Shown here in pieces: positions 1-16,126 of a stretch of 64,000 nucleotides of DNA. This DNA is from Podarcis muralis (Eukaryota): assembly GCF_964188315.1 (NCBI RefSeq), contig NC_135667.1:25916001-25980000 (forward strand). The letters are read 5' to 3'. The notes beneath the pieces are model-generated. The model had not been told where the DNA came from. It saw only the letters and a list, made by a program, of their open reading frames with translations, and made no database searches. The position numbers were made by a program, and so were the translations under genes. The number at the start of each line of letters is the position of its first letter. Positions within the stretch are counted from its first letter, which is position 1.

Positions 1-2292
1 GTCCGCGACCTCCCCTCTCATTCCAGGCCACCAGAAATCCCTGGCGACTAATTCCACCGTCTTCTCCTTGCCGAAGTGCCCTGCAGTGGGCGCGTCGTGC
101 AGCTGCTGCAGCACCTTGGCGCGAAGTTCGTCTCCCGGCACGTAGATGGCCCCTTTACGGATGAGCAATCCATCTCTTAGCTGGAAACCGTCGGCCGCTG
201 CCTTGCCCCTTTGCACCTCTGCCATCTTTGCTTGCGCGAAGGAGTCCCCCTGCAACGCTCGTCGCACCGCCTCCAGATCCACGGTTGCCGCGGCGCACGC
301 CCACACTGTTGGTGCGAAGATGTGCATGGCGGCCGCTGGCGTTGCGTCCTCCAGATACTGTGGCTTGCGAGAGAGAGCGTCCGCCATGATGTTGGTGTCC
401 CCCGGGACATACTCTATTCGGAAGTCGAAGTTCGCAAAGAACTCAGCCCAACGTATCTGCCTTTGGTTCAGGAACTGTGCCGTGCGCCAGTGCTCTAGGT
501 TCTTGTGGTCCGTGCAAACCTGCACCGTGTGCTTGGCGCCGATCAGAAAGTGCCTCCACGCCTTGAACGCTGCATGAATGGCCAGCAACTCCCTGTCCCA
601 TATGGTGTAGTTCTGCTCGGACTTGCTGAGCTTCCTGGAGTAAAACGCTCCCGGTCGCCACACCCCCTGCGGGTCTTTCTGCAGCAGGACCGCCCCCACG
701 GCTCTGTCCGAGGCGTCTGTCTCCACCCTCATCGGCTTGCTGGGGTTGACATGAAGCAGCTGCTCTTCCGACGCGAAGAGACGCTTGAGTGCCTGAAAGG
801 ACTGTTCCGCCTGCTCTGTCCAAATAAACTTCTTTTTCTTGGAGCTAAGCGTGTCAGTGATGGCCGCCGTCTGCATAGCGAAGCCCTTGATAAACTTGCG
901 ATAGAAGTTCGCAAAGCCGACAAACCGTTGGACCTCCTTCCGGTTGCGCGGGCTCTTCCAATCCAACACCGCTCGAACCTTGGCGCTGTCCATGGCGAGC
1001 CCCTTGTCAGACAGCTTGTAGCCCAGAAAACCCACCTCCGTCACGTCAAATTGGCACTTCTCCAGCTTGGCGTAGAGCCTATGTTGCTTTAGCCTGTTCA
1101 GCACTTCCTTGACGTGTTTGTCATGCTCCTGTTGCGACTCCGAAAAGATCAGGATGTCATCTAAGAAACAGACGCATGTCTTGTAGAGAAGTCCCGCCAA
1201 CACGTGATGCATGAATGCTTGAAAAACGTGGGAGCCATTTTGCAATCCAAAAGGCATAACTCTATATTCGTAGGTCCCCAGTGGCGTGAACATGGCTGTT
1301 TTCCACTCATCTCCCTCCCGCATGCGAATGAGGTTGTACGCCCCTCGCAGGTCCAACTTGGTGAACACTCTGCCCTTCCGCACCTTTGCGAGGAGGTCGT
1401 CAATTCGGGGCATGGGGAAGTCCGACGGCTTAGTCACACTGTTCAAGATCCTGTAATCCACTACGAGTCTCTTTTGGGGCGTATCCCGCTTCTTAACGAA
1501 GAACACCGGGCTGCCTCCCGCCGCCTCGGACTCTCGGATGAAACCGCGCTCCAAATTATGATCTATGAACTCTTTGAGTTCTTGCAGTTCGTCCTCTGAC
1601 ATGGAATACAGTCTCCCCTTAGGCAGCGCCGCCCCTGGCAGCAGGTCAATCTTGCAGTCATATGGCCTGTGAGGGGGTAGCCTGTCTGCCTCCTTCTCGC
1701 AGAAAACTTCCAAAAATTCTGCGTACTTGTGGGGAATCGCTTGCAGCGTGCCTAGCAGCAGCTGTGACTCTTCTTCCTCTCCTTCCTGCCTGGGCACGAT
1801 GCAGTGTTCAGCACAAAAGGAAGAGCCGAAGGTCAGCTGCCTCTGGTACCAAGCCAGCGTTGGGCTGTGCTTGTCCAGCCAACTCATGCCCAACACAATG
1901 GGCGTGTCCGACAATTGAGTGACGTTGAAGCTGATGACTTCTTTGTGATTCCCAAGTCGCATCACCATTGGTGGCGTCTGCTGCACCACTTGCCCCCCTA
2001 GCAGCTCCCTGCCATCCACCGTGACAACCTGCAGGGGCAGTGTGGCCGGCAGCAACTGTATAGCATGCTTGTTGACAAAGTCCTGCCCTATAAAGTCCGC
2101 ATTGCTGCCTGAGTCAATGGTGATTGGCACGTCCAAGGTGATGCCATTGGGCAGCTGGAGCGATGCGGTGAGCCTCACCACTGGTTTGGGCGGGAGGGGG
2201 TTCACGGGCTGTAAAATCTCTGGGGACTGCATCATTAATACGTCTGGCTGGGCCCCAGTGCCTCTTCCTCCAGCCAGACTGCATCGTTTCCC
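1..2292 (-). CDS. pol: Gypsy Pol (protease, reverse transcriptase, RNase H, start of integrase), expressed by -1 frameshift from gag; partial, open at the window edge
   Basis: Manual minus-strand translation found no stop from 2292 to 1. Motifs: IDSG (2107-2118), LPPHRPYD, RLVVDYR, KLDLRGAY, VMPFGL, FLDD (1156-1167), ETDASD, ELLAI, TDHKNL, ADALSRK and LHDAPTAGHFG (first half of the HHCC finger). Absent from the ORF track, probably because it has no stop inside the window. Confidence 0.93.
2220..2292 (-). promoter_or_regulatory. -1 programmed ribosomal frameshift signal: G GGA AAC slippery site + pseudoknot
   Basis: GGGAAAC (2292-2286) lies in the gag frame. A 6-nt spacer is followed by stem 1 GTCTGGCTGG/CCAGCCAGAC (10 bp) and stem 2 CTGGGG/CCCCAG. 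The pol frame is -1 relative to gag. Confidence 0.88.
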
Positions 2293-3308
2293 TGCTGTGG
2301 TTCTCCTTGCTGCGTTGCTGCAGTCGCCATTGCTGAGGCTGCAGTGAGCTTGCGGAGCCTCTGGGGACACTCTTTCGCCATATGCCCTGGCTCCTCACAG
2401 ACGTAACACTTCCTGTTCCCTCTAGGAGGCTTCGCTTTCACTGCTGCTGGTGCTAGGGCTCTGGTTGCTGACTGAGCCCTGGCACCTCCAACCTCCATCG
2501 GTTCAGCTCCTCCTCCTGGCGGAGGCGTGGATTGCGTACGTGCTGCTTCTCTGGGAAAGAAGGAGGAGCCCCTGGCTGGTTCGCGCCCTCCACGCCCTTC
2601 GTCCCTGCTCCACGGACGTCCTTCCAGCCGTACCCCCACTGCCAGCGCCCTCTGCACGACCTCCTGGGTGGTCCGGGGTCTCTCCCCCCTCGCAATTTCA
2701 TCTTTCACAGAGCTGTTTAATCCCTCCCAGAACAGGTCTCTTACAGGAGTCGCATCTCTGTCCCATTCTAGGGCACTGGCCAAGGCGAAAAAGCGGGCAT
2801 GGTACTGCCGTACGCTGGCCCTTCCCTGCTTCAGTCCATGAATCTGTTGCCGAGCAAGATCCACGTCAATGCTTGATAAAAAACACCCATCCATCGCTTT
2901 AATAAAGGCATTCGCATTTTGGAGCGCCGGATCGTTATCCCTCCACAAATTGCGCAGCCATGCCCTGGCATCCCCATGCAAATAGGACATGATGAATCCC
3001 ACTTTCTCCTGCTCATCTCTAAAATCTTTATTCAGCAGTTGCAGTGCACACAGCACGTCTGCTCTAAAATTGGGATACTGTTGCAGGTTCCCATCGAAGT
3101 GAGAGACCAGACCGCCTGTGCGTCTCCCCAAACCAATCCCCTCTGGTTTGGGTGTCTGTTGCCCTTGCTTCGTAAGCACTTCCAACCTGACCTGGAGATC
3201 CCTGTAGGCGGCAGCTGCGTCCTCCTCTCTCTTCCTGGATGCGAGAGCCTCGGCATTCAGCTGTGACACTGCTTCTCTGAGTTCCGCTATTTGCTGTTCA
3301 GCCATCAT
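2235..3308 (-). CDS. gag: Gypsy Gag (N-terminal coiled coil, capsid-like domain, CCHC zinc knuckle), 357 aa
   Basis: FDG...F...KVGFIMSYLHGDARAW capsid motif; LFWEGLNSSVKDEI; EPMEVG motif; CYVCEEPGHMAKEC knuckle. Starts about 80 nt after the PBS. Confidence 0.93.
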   Translation of the reverse strand: MMAEQQIAELREAVSQLNAEALASRKREEDAAAAYRDLQVRLEVLTKQGQQTPKPEGIGLGRRTGGLVSHFDGNLQQYPNFRADVLCALQLLNKDFRDEQEKVGFIMSYLHGDARAWLRNLWRDNDPALQNANAFIKAMDGCFLSSIDVDLARQQIHGLKQGRASVRQYHARFFALASALEWDRDATPVRDLFWEGLNSSVKDEIARGERPRTTQEVVQRALAVGVRLEGRPWSRDEGRGGREPARGSSFFPREAARTQSTPPPGGGAEPMEVGGARAQSATRALAPAAVKAKPPRGNRKCYVCEEPGHMAKECPQRLRKLTAASAMATAATQQGEPQQGNDAVWLEEEALGPSQTY

Positions 3309-3387
3309 GTCGGCTGCCGTTCGTGAGCTCGCTGGTAGGCACCTGCTTCTCTCCTCTCCTCGAGGCTGTATATGCCCACAATTCTTG

Positions 3388-3399
3388 CAGACGGAGCTT
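3388..3399 (-). promoter_or_regulatory. Primer-binding site, self-priming type
   Basis: AAGCTCCGTCTG lies 2 nt inside the LTR boundary and is the exact reverse complement of 3549-3538 (CAGACGGAGCTT) at the predicted TSS. It does not begin with the TGG expected for pairing with a tRNA CCA end. Confidence 0.85.
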
Positions 3400-3401
3400 A
3401 C

Positions 3402-4157
3402 TGTCAGAGTTGCTTCAAGATCCTAGCTCACAGAGGATCACGCTAGCCAACGGTCATTAAGTAAAAGTCTTTATTGAGTTACAGTTTCCATTCTCAAGCT
3501 GTTGCGTGCAACTCTACGTCTAGTAGCTAGATCGGCGAAGCTCCGTCTGAATCTCCGCCCCTTGTACACCAACTTAATATCCTAGCCCTGCTCCACCTTT
3601 TCCGCCTGACTGTTCTTCTCTGGGTCCCTCTGCCCCCCTGGGTCTCTTCCTTCCGGGATTCTTCTGACGCTGACCCCCCGGACCCTCCTGTCTCCTTGCG
3701 CCGGGCTTTAGGACCTGGCTCTCTTTCCGGGCTGCCTACTGCGCCGCCTTCCTGTGCATTTGAACTTGGCGCGCGCGCCCAACCTTCCACCTTCCGTCTA
3801 ACCGTCTCTTCGCTCCCAGATGGAGGTGTGGCCACCCCTGACTCGTGCCCTCCCTCCTGTTGTGAGCTGCCAGCGCTTGCCCCCTGGCTCCCTTCCTCTT
3901 CCCTGTTCTCTGGCGGTGACGCTGGTCCCGATCTCCAACTGCTCTCCTCTGAGTCCCCTCTGGCTCTATCTTCCTGGGGTGCCCCCCTAAACTCCCCCCT
4001 TGCCTTGGCCACTGGTGCTCCTTTCTGTGAATCCTCCGATTCACTGGAAAGACTCGGAGATCTCGGGTCGTCGTCATCACTCATCTTTTCTTCTGCCTCC
4101 TCCCCTTCGCTCTCTGTTTCCTCCCTTGCCCTTGCCTCTGCTCCTGAACCCCTGACA
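3402..4157 (-). repeat. 5' LTR of the Gypsy element (756 bp)
   Basis: TGTCAG...CTGACA terminal inverted repeats. On the minus strand: TATTAAG (3579-3573), predicted TSS about 3549, AATAAA (3475-3470) and a purine-rich U3. Confidence 0.88.
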
Positions 4158-4988
4158 AATACTAATAACTTTTTTCAAAAAAAAAAGTGTCCCTGGATTC
4201 TTTGAAAAAAAATCTGGTAACCTTACTATAGTTTCTACAATTTTTGGGGTGAATAATGTGTATCAAATGTGTGCTGAACATGCTTTAGGTGTATAATATG
4301 GATCTTCCATAAATTTCACTATCTTTCATTTTCTTTGTTCCTTTGCATGCAACTGGGGCAATGAGTTTCCCATGTTTGCAGCTGTCCCATTGTGCTGTAA
4401 CTTTAACTGCAGTTTGATGTTGAGCAACTTTGCAGCTAATAATGTTTAACTCAATGTCTTTTTTCTTGGGGGAAAAGTGACATCAAACTTCCCATAATGA
4501 CACAGCTACAGGGGCCAGTTAAAGTTGCCAGTCTGAACCAACAAGAACAAATCTTTTTGTAGTTTATGCAACACTTGTTGTTTTTGTTATTTTCTACACA
4601 TTTAACAAATGGAAGAAAGGGGGAACAAAAAGAAACATGGGACACATCTGAAGAAGCCAGTTTGGTTGTTTGTGAGCACTCTGGTGAGTTGAGTCTTTTA
4701 AAGGATGTGCATATGAAATGGAAGGAGGGGCATATAACCACAGACCAATGCAATAGATAGCCCAAGCCTGTAAGTGTGATGTAAGGCAGGTTTACAAAGG
4801 TTGCTAAAACAATGACAAAGCAATGCAAAGTTGTTCCTTGTTTATGTTCAGAGCAAGAAAAAGAAGTGAGGGATACATTTATTGCTTGGACAAGACAGTG
4901 AAGTGTTAACAGGTGATGGAGAGAAGGTGCAACCACTAATTTTTTTTTGCTTTGCACTTCTCCCACAGCGGGAATGGTGTTCTACCTG

Positions 4989-5634: not shown

Positions 5635-6573
5635 ATGGGGAACCAGACAGAGGTCTACGAGTTCATTCTCTTGGGTATAGCAAATGACCACAGACAGCAA
5701 CACATGCTTTTCACAGTCTTCCTGCTGCTCTATGCGGCCTGCTTGCTAGGAAATGGGGCCATTTTGGCAGTAGTCCTGGTTGAGCAACGGCTTCACACCC
5801 CCATGTATTTTTTCCTTGGAAATCTCTCTTGCCTGGATATATGTTGCTCCACAGTTACTGTACCCAAAATGCTGAATGGCTTCCTAAAGAGGCACAACAC
5901 TATCTCCTTTATTGGTTGCTTGACTCAACTGCACTTCTTCCACTTCTTGGGCAGCAGTGAAGGCATGCTTCTGGGAGTCATGGCATATGACCGCTATGTG
6001 GCCATATGCAACCCTCTGCGTTACACCATCATCATGAATAAATGGGCTTGCCTTGCGCTAGCTGTGGCTACCTGGGCCGCAGGCTTCTTTCATGCCCTAA
6101 TGCACACAGTAGTCACTTCCCGGCTGTGGTTCTGTGGCCCCAATCTTATCCAGCACTTTTTCTGTGACATCAAGCCCCTGCTAGAATTGGCTTGCAGTAG
6201 CACGACCCTCAACATGACCCTCCTCAACGTTGTCACAAGTTGCATTGCTCTAGGTTCCTTCTTTCTCACTCTCCTTTCTTATCTCTATATCATCTCCTTC
6301 CTCTTCTTCAAAGTCCAGTCATGGCAGAGCCGTTGGAAGGCCTTCTCAACCTGTGCTTCTCACCTAACGGTGGTAGCACTTTTGTATGTTCCAGTTATTT
6401 TCAACTACATGCTTGCCTCTACTGGTGAATCTTCTGAAAGGGAAATGAGCATCACTCTGTTGTACAGTGTGGTCACACCTGTTTTAAACCCCTTGATCTA
6501 CACTTTGAGGAATCAAGAGGTAAAATCTGCTCTGAGGAAAATATTATGCAGAAAAATTATATTTCAAACATAG
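5635..6573 (+). CDS. Olfactory receptor, class II, OR12D-like, intact (312 aa)
   Basis: NQT glycosylation site, [51 protein letters not shown] polypyrimidine tract and CAG acceptor lie just upstream of the ATG. Confidence 0.95.
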   Translation: MGNQTEVYEFILLGIANDHRQQHMLFTVFLLLYAACLLGNGAILAVVLVEQRLHTPMYFFLGNLSCLDICCSTVTVPKMLNGFLKRHNTISFIGCLTQLHFFHFLGSSEGMLLGVMAYDRYVAICNPLRYTIIMNKWACLALAVATWAAGFFHALMHTVVTSRLWFCGPNLIQHFFCDIKPLLELACSSTTLNMTLLNVVTSCIALGSFFLTLLSYLYIISFLFFKVQSWQSRWKAFSTCASHLTVVALLYVPVIFNYMLASTGESSEREMSITLLYSVVTPVLNPLIYTLRNQEVKSALRKILCRKIIFQT

Positions 6574-9262: not shown

Positions 9263-9927
9263 TATACATTAGAGCACTCTGCAAACATTTTGCATTACTG
9301 TAATTACCATGTAGAAGTTCTAGATGTTATTTACACAAACTCAAAAATGTATTGTTAATGCAAGTTAATGATGTTTTGGATAGTTGTACTTCATTATTCT
9401 TTAGAAAGCTTACAACATTTTTCATTAACAGCTTCCTGCTGGTTTTCTCTCATACAGAGTCTGGCTAGATTCTATTTTTAAGAGACTTAACCATTTGGGC
9501 TATGGTTTTCATCCACTGTTTTCCTCCACCCCATTTTCTGGGAATTGTAGGTGGAAAAAGTGGAACTGCACTGAGGTTCTGCTTGTGAACTGGAAATAGA
9601 CATCTGGCCAACCACTGTGAGAACAGGATGCTGGGACAAATGTTCTAGTGAGTAAAGGCTCAGGAAGAGTGACCCATGAGCTTCTCTGCACATTTAAAAA
9701 GTCTGTAGATTTTACAACTCATTCATCCGTATGATATGACTAGGAATCTCAAAAGTAATGAAAATGGTTGAAGGAAAAGAAAATCACTTCTCTATATAGG
9801 AAGTTGGTTTAGAATTAGACTGAGTTTTATCTGCTTATGTCTGTATGGATTTCTGATATGGGTGATGGACTTGAATAATACTCTACAGTGATCTCACCTA
9901 CCTTTCTTCCTCCCTGCTGTCTTTTAG

Positions 9928-10898
9928 TGACAAAGAACCAAACAGAGGTGAGAGAATTCATCTTGACGGGCCTGACCAATCTCTGGCAGCTTCAGTGTAC
10001 ACTCTTTGCCGTCTTCCTGATGATGTATTTGGCCAGCCTACTGGGGAATGCAGCTATTGTGCTTGTTGCAATAGTTGAACCAAAACTTCACACTCCTATG
10101 TACTTTTTTCTTGGAAACCTTTCCTGCCTTGACATCTTCTTTTCCACAGTCACTGTCCCAAAGATGCTAGCTGGTTTTCTGTTGCCAGTCCAAACCATTT
10201 CCTTTCCTGGCTGCATGGCCCAGCTCCACTTTTTCCATTTCTTGGGCAGCAGTGAAGCCATTCTTCTTGGAGTAATGGCATTTGATCGCTATGTTGCAAT
10301 ATGCAATCCTTTGCGTTACTCCATCATCATGCGCAGGCAGGTTTGCCAAATCTTGGCAGCAGCCACTTGGTCCGCTGGCTTTTTTCATGCCTTGATGCAT
10401 GCAGTGGCAACTGCCCGTCTGCCCTTCTGTGGGCCAAACCACATTGAACACTTTTTATGTGACATCAAACCTTTGCTGAAACTGGCCTGTGGGAGCACCT
10501 ACCTCAACCTCATGCTCCTCAACACTGTAGCTAGCTCCGTTGCCATGGGACCTTTCATTGCCACACTCCTCTCCTACTTCTATATTATCATTTTTCTTCT
10601 CTTCAAAGTGCAATCCCGAAGTGGTCGACAGAAAGCCTTCTCCACCTGCGGATCCCATTTGATGGTGGTTGGGTTGATGTACGTGCCAGTGTTGTTTAAC
10701 TACATGCTGCCCTCTGTGGAGAATGCTTCGCAAAGAGAAATGATGGTGACCCTCATATATAGTGCAGTTACCCCAGTTTTGAACCCACTTATTTATACAC
10801 TGAGGAACCAGGAAGTCAAAACTGCTGTGTTAAAGATTTTCACCAGAATATTTCAGTTTCCACTGAAAGGAAAAAATAAAAAAAGACTTTGTGAATAA
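9928..10898 (+). CDS. Olfactory receptor OR12D-like, main coding exon; the paralogous ATG is mutated (ACA), probably started from an upstream exon
   Basis: Full 7TM ORF with all OR motifs. Acceptor TTTTAG (AG 9926-9927) is followed by TG ACA AAG AAC, where the paralogs have TG/CA ATG GAG AAY. The first in-exon ATG is at 10020, inside TM1. Confidence 0.85.
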
Positions 10899-13983: not shown

Positions 13984-15187
13984 GACCAGGATAGAGAAAA
14001 CAATAAAACACAGATAACCAGTGCCAGGAAGGGATAATCAGAGACAGGAAGAGTTGACCATGCCAGATCACCAATCTCAAAATAACAATAATTATTCTGT
14101 AATAATTATCCCATACACTCAGTTTCTCATATTCTCAGTCTTAAATTTGATTATTCACATTTCTACATCAAGTTTGTGATTTTTTTTAAAAAAAGAAAAG
14201 TCCTCATGAAAATTCAGCATCATTTTAACACAAATTTCTCCCATTTTTTCTAATAGGATACATTTTGGTATGTTGATGCTCACAAGTAGATGAATGTATA
14301 TACATACGATGCCTGCATGTGCATGTATATCAATCTTTGTACAAATTACAAGGCTATAATTGCACCATTCAGATAAGTGTTAATTTTGGAAGAAGGTTGT
14401 GTTTGCTCCCCATGTTGTTTTTGAAAGTATGAATTCTGTTGATAGACTCTGATGCTACAAGGCAGGTTCCTGGTATTTGTTAGGCACACACACCATGTCA
14501 GCTGCTGGAAGTTGTACTCTGTTGCCGCCTGATGCACATATGAAAACCTTCATACTTTTAAGGAATAGAAAACAAAAGGGCCAAAAAGCTGCATCACCAC
14601 TGGATACAGGCATACTATTTTTAACAAACATATTCCAATATGAAGAGAAGAGCATTTTTGTTAGTGTCTTGAATCCATGTTGGTTGCAGACAGCTTCTCT
14701 AACCAATTTCCACACTGATGATGTAATCAACTGTTTTGAAATCTACAAAGCTACAGTATGAGTGGGCACTAGTCACGATGGCCATTTTCTACCTCCCTTG
14801 TCAGAGGCAGTATGTCTCTGAATACCATTTTCTAGAAATTGCAGGTGGATAGAGTGCTGATGCACTCAGGTTCAGCTTTTGATGTGGCCATGAACAAGTA
14901 ATAGGCTACTTGAGAACGGTATGACTCTCATAAGTAGTTATAATATTTTTTTATTATTAAAAAATCCCTAAACAGAATGAAGGTGGGTTTAGAGTTAAAT
15001 AGAAACGTTCTTCGTCATTTTTATTGTTTATGTACATGTTAACAGTCTTTCACCCTTCCTACAATTCCACTGAGCAATTTTATACACTTCTTTCTGAACA
15101 ATTTTCTTATATACTGTAGGTAATGGATATTACTTGCACTCTACAGTGACCTCCTCTCGCCTTATTATTCTCTGCTGCCTTTTAGTG

Positions 15188-16126
15188 ATGGAGAATCAAA
15201 CAGAGGTGACAGAATTCATCTTAATGGGCCTGACCAATGTCTGGGAGCTTCAGTGTATACTCTTTGCCATCTTCCTGATGATGTATTTGGCCAGCCTAGT
15301 GGGGAATGCAGCTATCTTGCTCGTCACAATAGCTGAACCAAAGCTTCACACTCCCATGTACTTTTTTCTTGGAAACCTTTCTTGCCTTGACATTTTCTAT
15401 TCCACCACCACAGTTCCAAAGATGCTGGCTGGTTTTCTATCAGAGACGCAAAAAATTTCATTTGGTGGCTGTATGGCTCAGCTCCACTTCTTCTATTTTC
15501 TGGGCAGCAGTGAAGGCATTCTTCTCGGTGTCATGGCATTTGATCGCTATGTTGCAATATGCAACCCCTTGCGTTACACCATCATCATGCGCAAGCAGGT
15601 CTCCCAACTCATGGCAGCAGCCACATGGTCCGCTGGCTTTTTTCATGCCCTGATGCATACAATGGCAACTGCCCGTCTCCCCTTTTGTGGGCCAAACCGC
15701 ATTGAACACTTTTTATGTGATATCAAACCTTTGCTGAAACTGGCCTGCGGTAGCACCTACCTCAGCCTGATGCTCCTCAACACAGTAACCAGCTGTGTTG
15801 CTATGGGTCCTTTTATTGCCATACTCCTCTCTTACTTCTACATTATCACTTTTCTTCTCTTCAAAGTGCAGTCCCAAAGTGGTCGGCAGAAAGCCTTCTC
15901 CACCTGTGGATCCCATCTGATGGTGGTTAGTTTGCTGTACGTGCCTGTTCTGTTTAACTACATGCTCCCCTCTGTGGGTAATGCTTCTCAAAGGGACATG
16001 ATGGTGACCCTCATATACAGTGCACTCACCCCACTTTTAAACCCACTTATTTATACTCTGAGGAACCAGGAAGTCAAAGCTGCCTTGCTAAAGATTCTGG
16101 GGAAAAAATATTTCATTTTTCACTGA
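15188..16126 (+). CDS. Olfactory receptor OR12D-like, intact (312 aa from MENQT)
   Basis: All OR motifs present; ATG follows a TTTTAG acceptor. The ORF-track extension from 15134 is intronic sequence. Confidence 0.95.
   Translation: MENQTEVTEFILMGLTNVWELQCILFAIFLMMYLASLVGNAAILLVTIAEPKLHTPMYFFLGNLSCLDIFYSTTTVPKMLAGFLSETQKISFGGCMAQLHFFYFLGSSEGILLGVMAFDRYVAICNPLRYTIIMRKQVSQLMAAATWSAGFFHALMHTMATARLPFCGPNRIEHFLCDIKPLLKLACGSTYLSLMLLNTVTSCVAMGPFIAILLSYFYIITFLLFKVQSQSGRQKAFSTCGSHLMVVSLLYVPVLFNYMLPSVGNASQRDMMVTLIYSALTPLLNPLIYTLRNQEVKAALLKILGKKYFIFH

What the first reader, a model, noticed from the sequence alone, without database searches (positions are those of the whole stretch)
3388..3579. tRNA-independent, self-priming reverse transcription signal in a lizard Gypsy element
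Seen: the 12-nt PBS (minus strand AAGCTCCGTCTG, 3399-3388) lies 2 nt inside the LTR boundary. It is the perfect complement of LTR positions 3549-3538 (CAGACGGAGCTT). A TATTAAG box starts exactly 30 nt upstream of 3549, so this 12-mer should be the first bases of the genomic RNA. U5 also has a GATCCT/AGGATC hairpin, and TCTTG/CAAGA flank the PBS. Known: S. pombe Tf1 and the Tf1/sushi group prime minus-strand synthesis by folding the RNA 5' end onto the PBS, followed by RNase H cleavage. Inference: an apparently coding-intact amniote element retains this mechanism.
Basis: partly seen in the sequence, partly recalled or inferred. Interest (0 to 1): 0.85.

Follow-up and report, generated by a model that had tools for sequence, protein, structure and literature searches.

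The report
Self-priming signal in lizard Gypsy retrotransposon
A lizard Ty3/Gypsy retrotransposon most likely starts copying its RNA into DNA with a piece of its own RNA instead of a host tRNA; related copies strongly support this, but the mechanism is already known for this group of elements in yeast and vertebrates.

Summary
On the minus strand a 756-nt LTR (4157-3402) is followed by GT and then a primer binding site (PBS, 3399-3388). That site is the exact complement of an LTR-internal 12-mer (3549-3538). Only 9 of 20,000 LTR shuffles give a match this long.

Eight natural copies (the window, five short Logan contigs of unnamed species, and two full-length Podarcis lilfordi copies) carry five different primer/PBS sequence pairs. 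All are 11/11 complementary. Four of the 11 pairs changed, always on both sides. A second duplex (R with the end of U5) and the U5 hairpin also covary.

The conserved duplex is 11 bp, as in yeast Tf1. The 12th pair is not found in any of the seven other copies. The TATTAAG box and the TCTTG/CAAGA pairing are not conserved. An invariant TCAGA places a plausible start at A 3548. RNA reads did not show the start site.

Two P. lilfordi copies have substitution-free LTR pairs and 5-bp target duplications, so the family moved recently.

Self-priming is already the accepted hallmark of the Tf1/sushi group, vertebrates included, so this is a new member of a known kind. The scan noted an 11-nt LTR/PBS duplex elsewhere in this genome (s1-152854). 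Side finding: the LTR carries a conserved reading frame.

The parts
3402..4157 (-). 5' LTR, 756 nt, with TGTCAG...CTGACA terminal inverted repeats. Putative U3 is 4157-3549, R is 3548 to about 3450, and U5 is about 3450 to 3402.
   Evidence: Read directly. The same LTR with the same ends occurs in L001, L010, L011, L012, L013 and L014. In L011 and L012 it occurs as two direct copies flanked by 5-bp target duplications.
3573..3579 (-). TATTAAG, a TATA-like box 31 nt before A 3548. It is not conserved in the family.
   Evidence: Relatives have GTATTAAG, AATCTTAAA or GTCTTGAA at this place.
3546..3550 (-). TCAGA, an initiator-like motif. Its A (3548) is the first base of the 11-nt self-primer and the inferred transcription start.
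   Evidence: Invariant in all eight copies. The start itself is inferred and not mapped.
3538..3548 (-). Self-primer, AGACGGAGCTT (11 nt). In this copy the complementarity extends one base further, to C 3549.
   Evidence: There are five haplotypes in eight copies, each the exact complement of its own PBS.
3508..3517 (-). R arm of the second duplex (GTAGAGTTGC).
   Evidence: Pairs with 3413-3403 in the MFE and alignment folds. The 8-bp core shows two-sided changes in L005, L011/L012, L014 and L003/L010.
3470..3475 (-). AATAAA polyadenylation signal, which sets the R/U5 border about 15-25 nt downstream.
   Evidence: Invariant in all aligned copies.
3419..3439 (-). U5 hairpin: GATCCT, a 9-nt loop, then AGGATC.
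   Evidence: Conserved, with one two-sided and two one-sided changes (GGTCCT/AGGACC, GGTCTT/GGGACC).
3403..3413 (-). U5-end arm of the second duplex (GCAACTCTGAC), directly upstream of the PBS.
3400..3401 (-). GT spacer between the LTR end (CA) and the PBS.
   Evidence: Invariant in all copies. It pairs with CG just after the primer in the alignment fold.
3388..3399 (-). Primer binding site: AAGCTCCGTCT (3399-3389) plus G 3388, which pairs only in this copy.
2238..3308 (-). gag, 357 codons, open.
   Evidence: Pfam hits to Retrotrans_gag, DUF4939/RTL1-8_LDOC, Ty3_capsid and zf-CCHC. The only solved relative is PEG10.
1..2394 (-). pol in the -1 frame, open for 798 codons and cut by the window edge inside the integrase zinc domain.
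   Evidence: Domains are protease, RT, RNase H and Integrase_H2C2. The best solved relative is Ty3 Gag-Pol. A GGGAAAC heptamer lies in the gag/pol overlap.
3527..4156 (-). Conserved reading frame inside the LTR, 209 codons, from the first LTR codon to TAG just after the self-primer.
   Evidence: side finding.

Best explanation
This is the minus-strand priming signal of a Tf1/sushi-type (chromovirus) Ty3/Gypsy retrotransposon of lacertid lizards.

Proposed mechanism:
1. The genomic RNA starts at or just before A 3548 in the 5' LTR.
2. Its first 11 nt (AGACGGAGCUU) fold back about 150 nt onto the complementary PBS, which lies 2 nt after the LTR.
3. A second duplex (R 3517-3508 with the U5 end 3413-3403) and a U5 hairpin (3439-3419) hold this fold together.
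4. The element's RNase H cuts after nt 11.
5. The freed 3'-OH primes minus-strand strong-stop DNA through U5 and R.
6. The primer is copied again during plus-strand synthesis, so each new copy gets a PBS that matches its own primer.

Shown here: the complementarity, its position, its conservation and covariation, the accompanying helices, and recent mobility of the family.

Inferred by analogy with Tf1: the exact RNA 5' end, the cleavage, and the priming itself.
For: - The complement is exact and sits 2 nt after the LTR. A match this long arose in 9 of 20,000 shuffles.
- Eight natural copies spanning about 59-92% gag identity carry five primer/PBS haplotypes: AGACGGAGCTT, AGATGGAGCTT, AGACGAGGCTT, AGATGGGACTT and AGACGGGTCTT. 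Each is 11/11 complementary to its own PBS, and 4 of 11 pairs changed, always on both sides.
- The primer-to-PBS spacing is fixed at 149-150 nt.
- Over the whole alignment fold, 234 of 258 cells pair, against 81-103 of about 250 when partners are slid by 1-3 columns. Pairs with two-sided changes number 13, against 0-3.
- The second duplex and the U5 hairpin covary.
- In six of eight single-sequence MFE folds, all 11 primer bases pair with the PBS.
- The PBS lacks the TGG needed for a tRNA CCA end.
- L011 and L012 have LTR pairs with no substitution and 5-bp target duplications, so the signal worked recently.
- Gag matches the PEG10/RTL families, and the nearest pol relatives are chromoviruses.
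- Literature: the first 11 nt of Tf1 RNA pair with the PBS and RNase H cuts between nt 11 and 12 (PMC7175516). A three-duplex 'pretzel' and self-priming are common to Tf1/sushi elements, vertebrates included (PMC10085805, PMC6317226, PMC4600332).
Against: - The RNA 5' end is not mapped. In two RNA runs of the same species label, no cluster of molecule starts appears at 3548/3549. Depth runs on through U3 on both strands, and internal depth is only 1-5 reads.
- A few reads carrying a 5' tag (the letters ATTGCGCAATG, which I recognise from memory as a Smart-seq3 template-switch tag) end at 3561 and about 3632-3638, upstream of the primer. Both sites are G-runs, so they may be template-switching artefacts.
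- The TATA-like box is not conserved.
- The MFE folds of L001 and L010 do not pair primer and PBS.
- No duplex downstream of the PBS is conserved, so the Tf1 'pretzel' is matched only in part.
- No biochemical evidence exists for cleavage or priming.
- The species' tRNA set could not be scanned. No tRNA gene occurs in the window or in L011/L012.
Confidence: 0.85

Rival explanations
1. The R/PBS and R/U5 helices are a conserved leader RNA structure with another role, such as packaging, dimerisation, translation control or strand transfer. Minus-strand synthesis would then be primed by something else.
For: Covariation shows that pairing is selected or regenerated, not what the pairing does. The start site and the cleavage are not shown.
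Against: - One arm sits exactly where every LTR element needs its primer, 2 nt after the CA end of U5, and no other candidate PBS is present.
- No TGG follows the LTR.
- The duplex is 11 bp long and perfect in every copy, including two very recent insertions. That fits a site re-copied from its primer at each cycle better than a merely selected helix, where G-U pairs and occasional mismatches are expected. The other helices do show these.
Confidence: 0.08
2. Priming uses an internal part or a fragment of a host tRNA or other small RNA, and the match to R is secondary.
For: Half-tRNA primers are known in other LTR elements (PMC6317226). The species' tRNA set could not be scanned here.
Against: The PBS differs at 4 of 11 positions among family members living in closely related hosts, and every change is mirrored in R. 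A site matched to an invariant host RNA should stay constant and should not track R.
Confidence: 0.04
3. The 12-nt complement is a chance match in a GC-rich LTR.
For: Short inverted matches are common. 9 of 20,000 shuffles reach 12 nt.
Against: The same two sites are complementary in eight copies with five different sequences.
Confidence: 0.01

Closest known systems
[quoted passage not shown]
   Same: - An 11-nt self-primer that is complementary to a PBS just after the 5' LTR.
- Extra duplexes between PBS-adjacent sequence and LTR sequence downstream of the primer.
- A U5 stem-loop.
- Ty3/Gypsy gene order.
   Different: - The host is a vertebrate.
- gag and pol are separated by a -1 frameshift rather than forming a single frame.
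- Only the duplex upstream of the PBS is conserved here. None downstream of it was found.
- The RNA start and the RNase H cut are shown for Tf1 and only inferred here.
- Here the primer lies inside a conserved reading frame of the LTR.
Vertebrate Tf1/sushi elements (sushi-ichi of Fugu and the Amn-like elements, GyDB 'V-clade'; Butler et al. 2001, cited in PMC10085805, PMC4600332, PMC6317226, PMC2774666)
   Same: - Vertebrate chromoviruses for which self-priming and the 'pretzel' fold were proposed from sequence.
- Gag related to the sushi-derived PEG10/RTL genes.
   Different: - This family is from lacertid lizards, with nearest proteins in Podarcis.
- I found no paper in the searchable library that describes self-priming in a lizard element. 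Butler et al. 2001 itself could not be read.
- No tree with reference elements was made here.
Tj1 of S. japonicus, Tcn1 of Cryptococcus and the plant Tcn1 clade (PMC4600332, PMC7175516, PMC6317226)
   Same: Self-priming is inferred from primer/PBS complementarity in the 5' LTR.
   Different: The hosts are fungi and plants. Tj1 was shown to be active by experiment.

Membership tests
Self-priming LTR retrotransposons (Tf1 type) | PBS directly after the 5' LTR that is complementary to a sequence of the same LTR, not to a tRNA 3' end | tested here: met
   There is no TGG after the LTR. The 11/11 complement holds in eight copies.
Self-priming LTR retrotransposons (Tf1 type) | The complementary sequence is the very 5' end of the element's RNA | tested here: inconclusive
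   RNA reads show no start cluster at 3548/3549, and internal depth is too low to judge. The invariant TCAGA with A at primer nt 1 is only suggestive.
Self-priming LTR retrotransposons (Tf1 type) | Additional duplexes between PBS-adjacent sequence and LTR sequence downstream of the primer ('pretzel'), plus a U5 stem-loop | tested here: met
   The duplex 3517-3508 with 3413-3403 and the hairpin 3439-3419 both covary. This is met in part: no conserved duplex was found on the downstream side of the PBS, and TCTTG/CAAGA is not conserved.
Self-priming LTR retrotransposons (Tf1 type) | RNase H cleavage after primer nt 11 and extension from that end | not testable with these tools
   This needs biochemistry or cDNA end mapping.
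Tf1/sushi group of chromoviruses | Ty3/Gypsy pol with the order protease, RT, RNase H, integrase | tested here: met
   Pfam. The best solved relative is Ty3 Gag-Pol.
Tf1/sushi group of chromoviruses | Chromodomain at the integrase C-terminus | tested here: inconclusive
   That part of pol lies outside the window. P0009, 89% identical over the RT-integrase part of pol that was searched, has no Pfam Chromo hit, but it aligns across the chromodomain of the 63% relative P0014. Most hits at 42-63% identity carry PF00385.
Tf1/sushi group of chromoviruses | Placement inside the group in an RT/integrase tree with reference elements (Tf1, sushi-ichi, Amn) | not tested
The indirect support is gag hits to PF16297 (RTL1-8/LDOC) and to PEG10.

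The most novel reading that the evidence does not exclude
In this lizard family the LTR is also protein-coding. A frame under purifying selection (dN/dS 0.22-0.29) runs from the first LTR codon through U3 and ends in R, 9 nt after the self-primer. At the 3' LTR it is continuous with the reading frame upstream of the LTR, which is probably the tail of Pol. The promoter region, the transcription start and the self-primer would then be embedded in coding sequence. Primer changes, some of which alter amino acids, are copied into the non-coding PBS at each replication cycle. That would be an unusual architecture for a chromovirus, and a natural record of primer-to-PBS inheritance.
Probability: 0.5. 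Interest if true: 0.5.

Novelty: new member of a known kind. Interest (0 to 1): 0.35.

Why it matters
It adds a recently mobile amniote (lacertid lizard) family to the self-priming Tf1/sushi elements. It also supplies what sequence-only proposals usually lack: five naturally covarying primer/PBS pairs, plus covarying support helices. Together these act as a natural mutagenesis test of the fold. It does not change the picture of how these elements replicate. The coding LTR is the less expected part and may deserve its own follow-up.

Tried and rejected
- RNA read laying to map the start. It was uninformative: LTR reads are dominated by other LTR copies and read-through on both strands, and internal depth is 1-5. 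Tagged 5' reads at 3561 and about 3632-3638 sit on G-runs. I read them as possible strand-invasion artefacts, not as start sites.
- The TATA box as support. Rejected, because the motif is not conserved.
- The TCTTG/CAAGA pairing. It is kept only in L001 (with a G-U pair) and is absent from the other relatives and from the folds.
- A tRNA scan.
- Rfam. No family matched in 3200-4300.
- The original Tf1 papers and the Tf1/Tf2 review (PMC1369541, PMC109269, PMC231564, PMC6388632) are not held.
- L008 and L009 carry further PBS variants (AAGTCCCCTCC, AAGTCCCCTCT), but their contigs stop before R, so they could not be scored.
Alignments were made in scripts and only natural copies were compared.

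Full report
**What is there.**
- On the minus strand the window holds the 5' part of a Ty3/Gypsy LTR retrotransposon.
- The LTR runs 4157-3402 (756 nt, TGTCAG...CTGACA).
- It is followed by GT (3401-3400), then AAGCTCCGTCTG (3399-3388).
- gag is 3308-2238, 357 codons, with Pfam hits to Retrotrans_gag, DUF4939/RTL1-8_LDOC, Ty3_capsid and zf-CCHC.
- pol is in the -1 frame, 2394-1, open for 798 codons (protease, RT, RNase H, start of integrase), and is cut by the window edge.
- The 3' half of the element and its 3' LTR are outside the window, so 'coding-intact' cannot be judged.

**The observation.**
- The 12-mer after the LTR is the exact reverse complement of 3549-3538 inside the LTR. These are the only two matches in the window, even with one mismatch allowed.
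- A complement of at least 12 nt to a site starting within 6 nt of the LTR end arose in 9 of 20,000 dinucleotide-preserving shuffles of the LTR.
- Folded from 3549, the minimum-energy structure pairs nt 1-12 with the PBS and keeps the hairpin. The z-score against shuffles is a modest -1.9.

**Relatives.**
- Gag found eight relatives at 59-92% identity in Logan contigs. Their contigs were fetched as L001-L010.
- The LTR reading frame found more relatives. Among them are two 20-kb pieces of Podarcis lilfordi chromosomes that each hold a full-length copy (L011, L012) and one further lineage (L014).
- The nearest pol proteins are from Podarcis muralis, at 84-89% identity. The family therefore belongs to lacertid lizards.

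**Covariation, the decisive test.** Eight natural copies hold both sites. Their primer/PBS pairs are:

| Copy | Primer | PBS |
|---|---|---|
| window, L005 | AGACGGAGCTT | AAGCTCCGTCT |
| L001, L011, L012 | AGATGGAGCTT | AAGCTCCATCT |
| L003 | AGACGAGGCTT | AAGCCTCGTCT |
| L010 | AGATGGGACTT | AAGTCCCATCT |
| L014 | AGACGGGTCTT | AAGACCCGTCT |

- Every copy is complementary at 11 of 11 positions.
- Four of the 11 pairs vary, and every change is two-sided.
- The spacing is 149-150 nt in all copies.
- On the first five sequences (window, L001, L003, L005, L010), 234 of 258 cells pair over the whole alignment fold and 13 pairs show two-sided changes. With partners slid by 1-3 columns, the figures are 81-103 of about 250 cells and 0-3 pairs.
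- The 8-bp core of a second duplex joins R (3515-3508) to the end of U5 (3413-3406). It has its own matched variants: AGAGTTGC/GCAACTCT, AGCGCTGC/GCAGCGCT, AGAGCTGG/CCAGCTCT and AGGGCTGC/GCAGCCCT. There is also an AGAGAC form with a bulge.
- The U5 hairpin also covaries.
- A PBS that tracks R in this way is not what a site matched to an invariant host tRNA would do. The PBS also lacks the TGG needed to pair with a CCA end.

- The conserved duplex is 11 bp. The 12th pair (C 3549 with G 3388) is missing in all seven other copies.
- Base 3388 is left out in about half of the DNA contig depth and in all RNA reads that cover it.
- TATTAAG is replaced by GTATTAAG, AATCTTAAA or GTCTTGAA in relatives, including the two very recent copies. 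It is therefore weak support for a start site.
- TCAGA is invariant, and its A (3548) is nt 1 of the 11-mer. From general knowledge this resembles an initiator. However, the bases are also coding in the LTR frame, so conservation alone proves little.
- TCTTG/CAAGA is not conserved.

**RNA and DNA reads.**
- Two RNA runs of the same species label cover the LTR on both strands at depth 10-160. The internal region has depth only 1-5, and no cluster of starts appears at 3548/3549.
- LTR depth in the run taken to be DNA (X16, type not on record) is several-fold the internal depth, so LTRs far outnumber internal regions in that run, as expected if solo LTRs are common.
- Loose ends of one run carry the letters ATTGCGCAATG at 3561 and 3638. 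I recognise these from memory as a Smart-seq3 5' tag. Both sites are G-runs and may be template-switching artefacts.
- The start site therefore remains unmapped.
- A start upstream of the primer would still allow priming, because the cut after the duplex creates the 3'-OH. A start downstream of 3538 would not.

**Recent activity.** In L011 and L012 the two LTRs (754-758 nt) differ by no substitution, only 1-2 gap columns. The elements are flanked by 5-bp duplications, CCTGA and ATTAT. In these two copies the internal reading frames are split over several frames. I describe this only.

**Comparison with what is known.**
- For Tf1, the first 11 nt of the RNA pair with the PBS and RNase H cuts between nt 11 and 12 (PMC7175516).
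- A three-duplex 'pretzel' is needed for Tf1. Self-priming is called a common feature of Tf1/sushi elements, which include vertebrate elements (PMC10085805, also PMC6317226 and PMC4600332, all citing Butler et al. 2001).
- Here gag matches PF16297 and PEG10, and pol is Ty3-like.
- The nearest full-length relative aligns across a chromodomain without reaching the Pfam threshold.
- No tree with reference elements was made.
- I found no paper on self-priming in a lizard element.
- Verdict: a new member of a known kind, with unusually good comparative support.
- An unchecked note of this scan reports an 11-nt LTR/PBS duplex on another piece of the same genome (s1-152854).

**Side finding: a reading frame in the LTR.**
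- The LTR is open from its first codon (4156) to TAG at 3529-3527, 9 nt after the primer.
- The frame and stop position are kept in L001 and L010, and all indels are multiples of three.
- dN/dS is 0.22-0.29.
- The translation matches the C-terminal 151 residues of P0009 (69% identity, E 2e-41).
- At the 3' LTR of L011 the frame is open for at least 100 codons upstream of the LTR.
- An upstream frame, probably the tail of Pol, therefore seems to read through U3 into R. In that case the primer also codes for protein in the 3' LTR copy.

Noticed in passing
window 4156-3527 (minus strand); also L001 2-667, L010 3-617, L011 9812-10537: The LTR holds a conserved reading frame of about 195-211 codons, from the first LTR codon to a stop in R just after the self-primer. 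dN/dS is 0.22-0.29 and all indels are multiples of three. It matches the C-terminal end of a Podarcis muralis pol protein (P0009). At the 3' LTR of L011 it continues the frame upstream of the LTR. An upstream frame, probably the tail of Pol, appears to read through U3 into R.
   Followed up: partly
L011 4419-10982 and L012 4203-10760 (Podarcis lilfordi, GCA_947686815.1): These are full-length copies of the family. Their LTR pairs have no substitution, and they have 5-bp target duplications (CCTGA, ATTAT), so they are very recent insertions. Their internal frames are split over several frames, by real mutation or by assembly indels.
   Followed up: partly
window 2293-2287 (minus strand): A GGGAAAC heptamer lies in the gag/pol overlap, with pol in the -1 frame. 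This fits the -1 frameshift signal noted by another first-stage note, s1-152806. The pseudoknot was not examined.
   Followed up: partly
window 3561 and 3632-3638: Reads of a single-cell RNA run carry the letters ATTGCGCAATG, which I recognise from memory as a Smart-seq3 5' tag, and end at two G-runs in U3 upstream of the self-primer. They could be upstream starts or strand-invasion artefacts.
   Followed up: no
window 5896-6195, 10191-10490, 15449-15748 and 9861-10160, 15119-15418: These are direct repeats of at least 300 nt at 74-89% identity, spaced 4.3-5.3 kb apart. They are probably other interspersed or LTR-type repeats and are unrelated to this element.
   Followed up: no
L008 about 31-41 and L009 about 45-55: Two more distant gag lineages (59-60% identity) have the same CTGACA-GT junction with further PBS variants, AAGTCCCCTCC and AAGTCCCCTCT. 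Their R regions are not on the contigs, so the predicted matching primers could not be checked.
   Followed up: no
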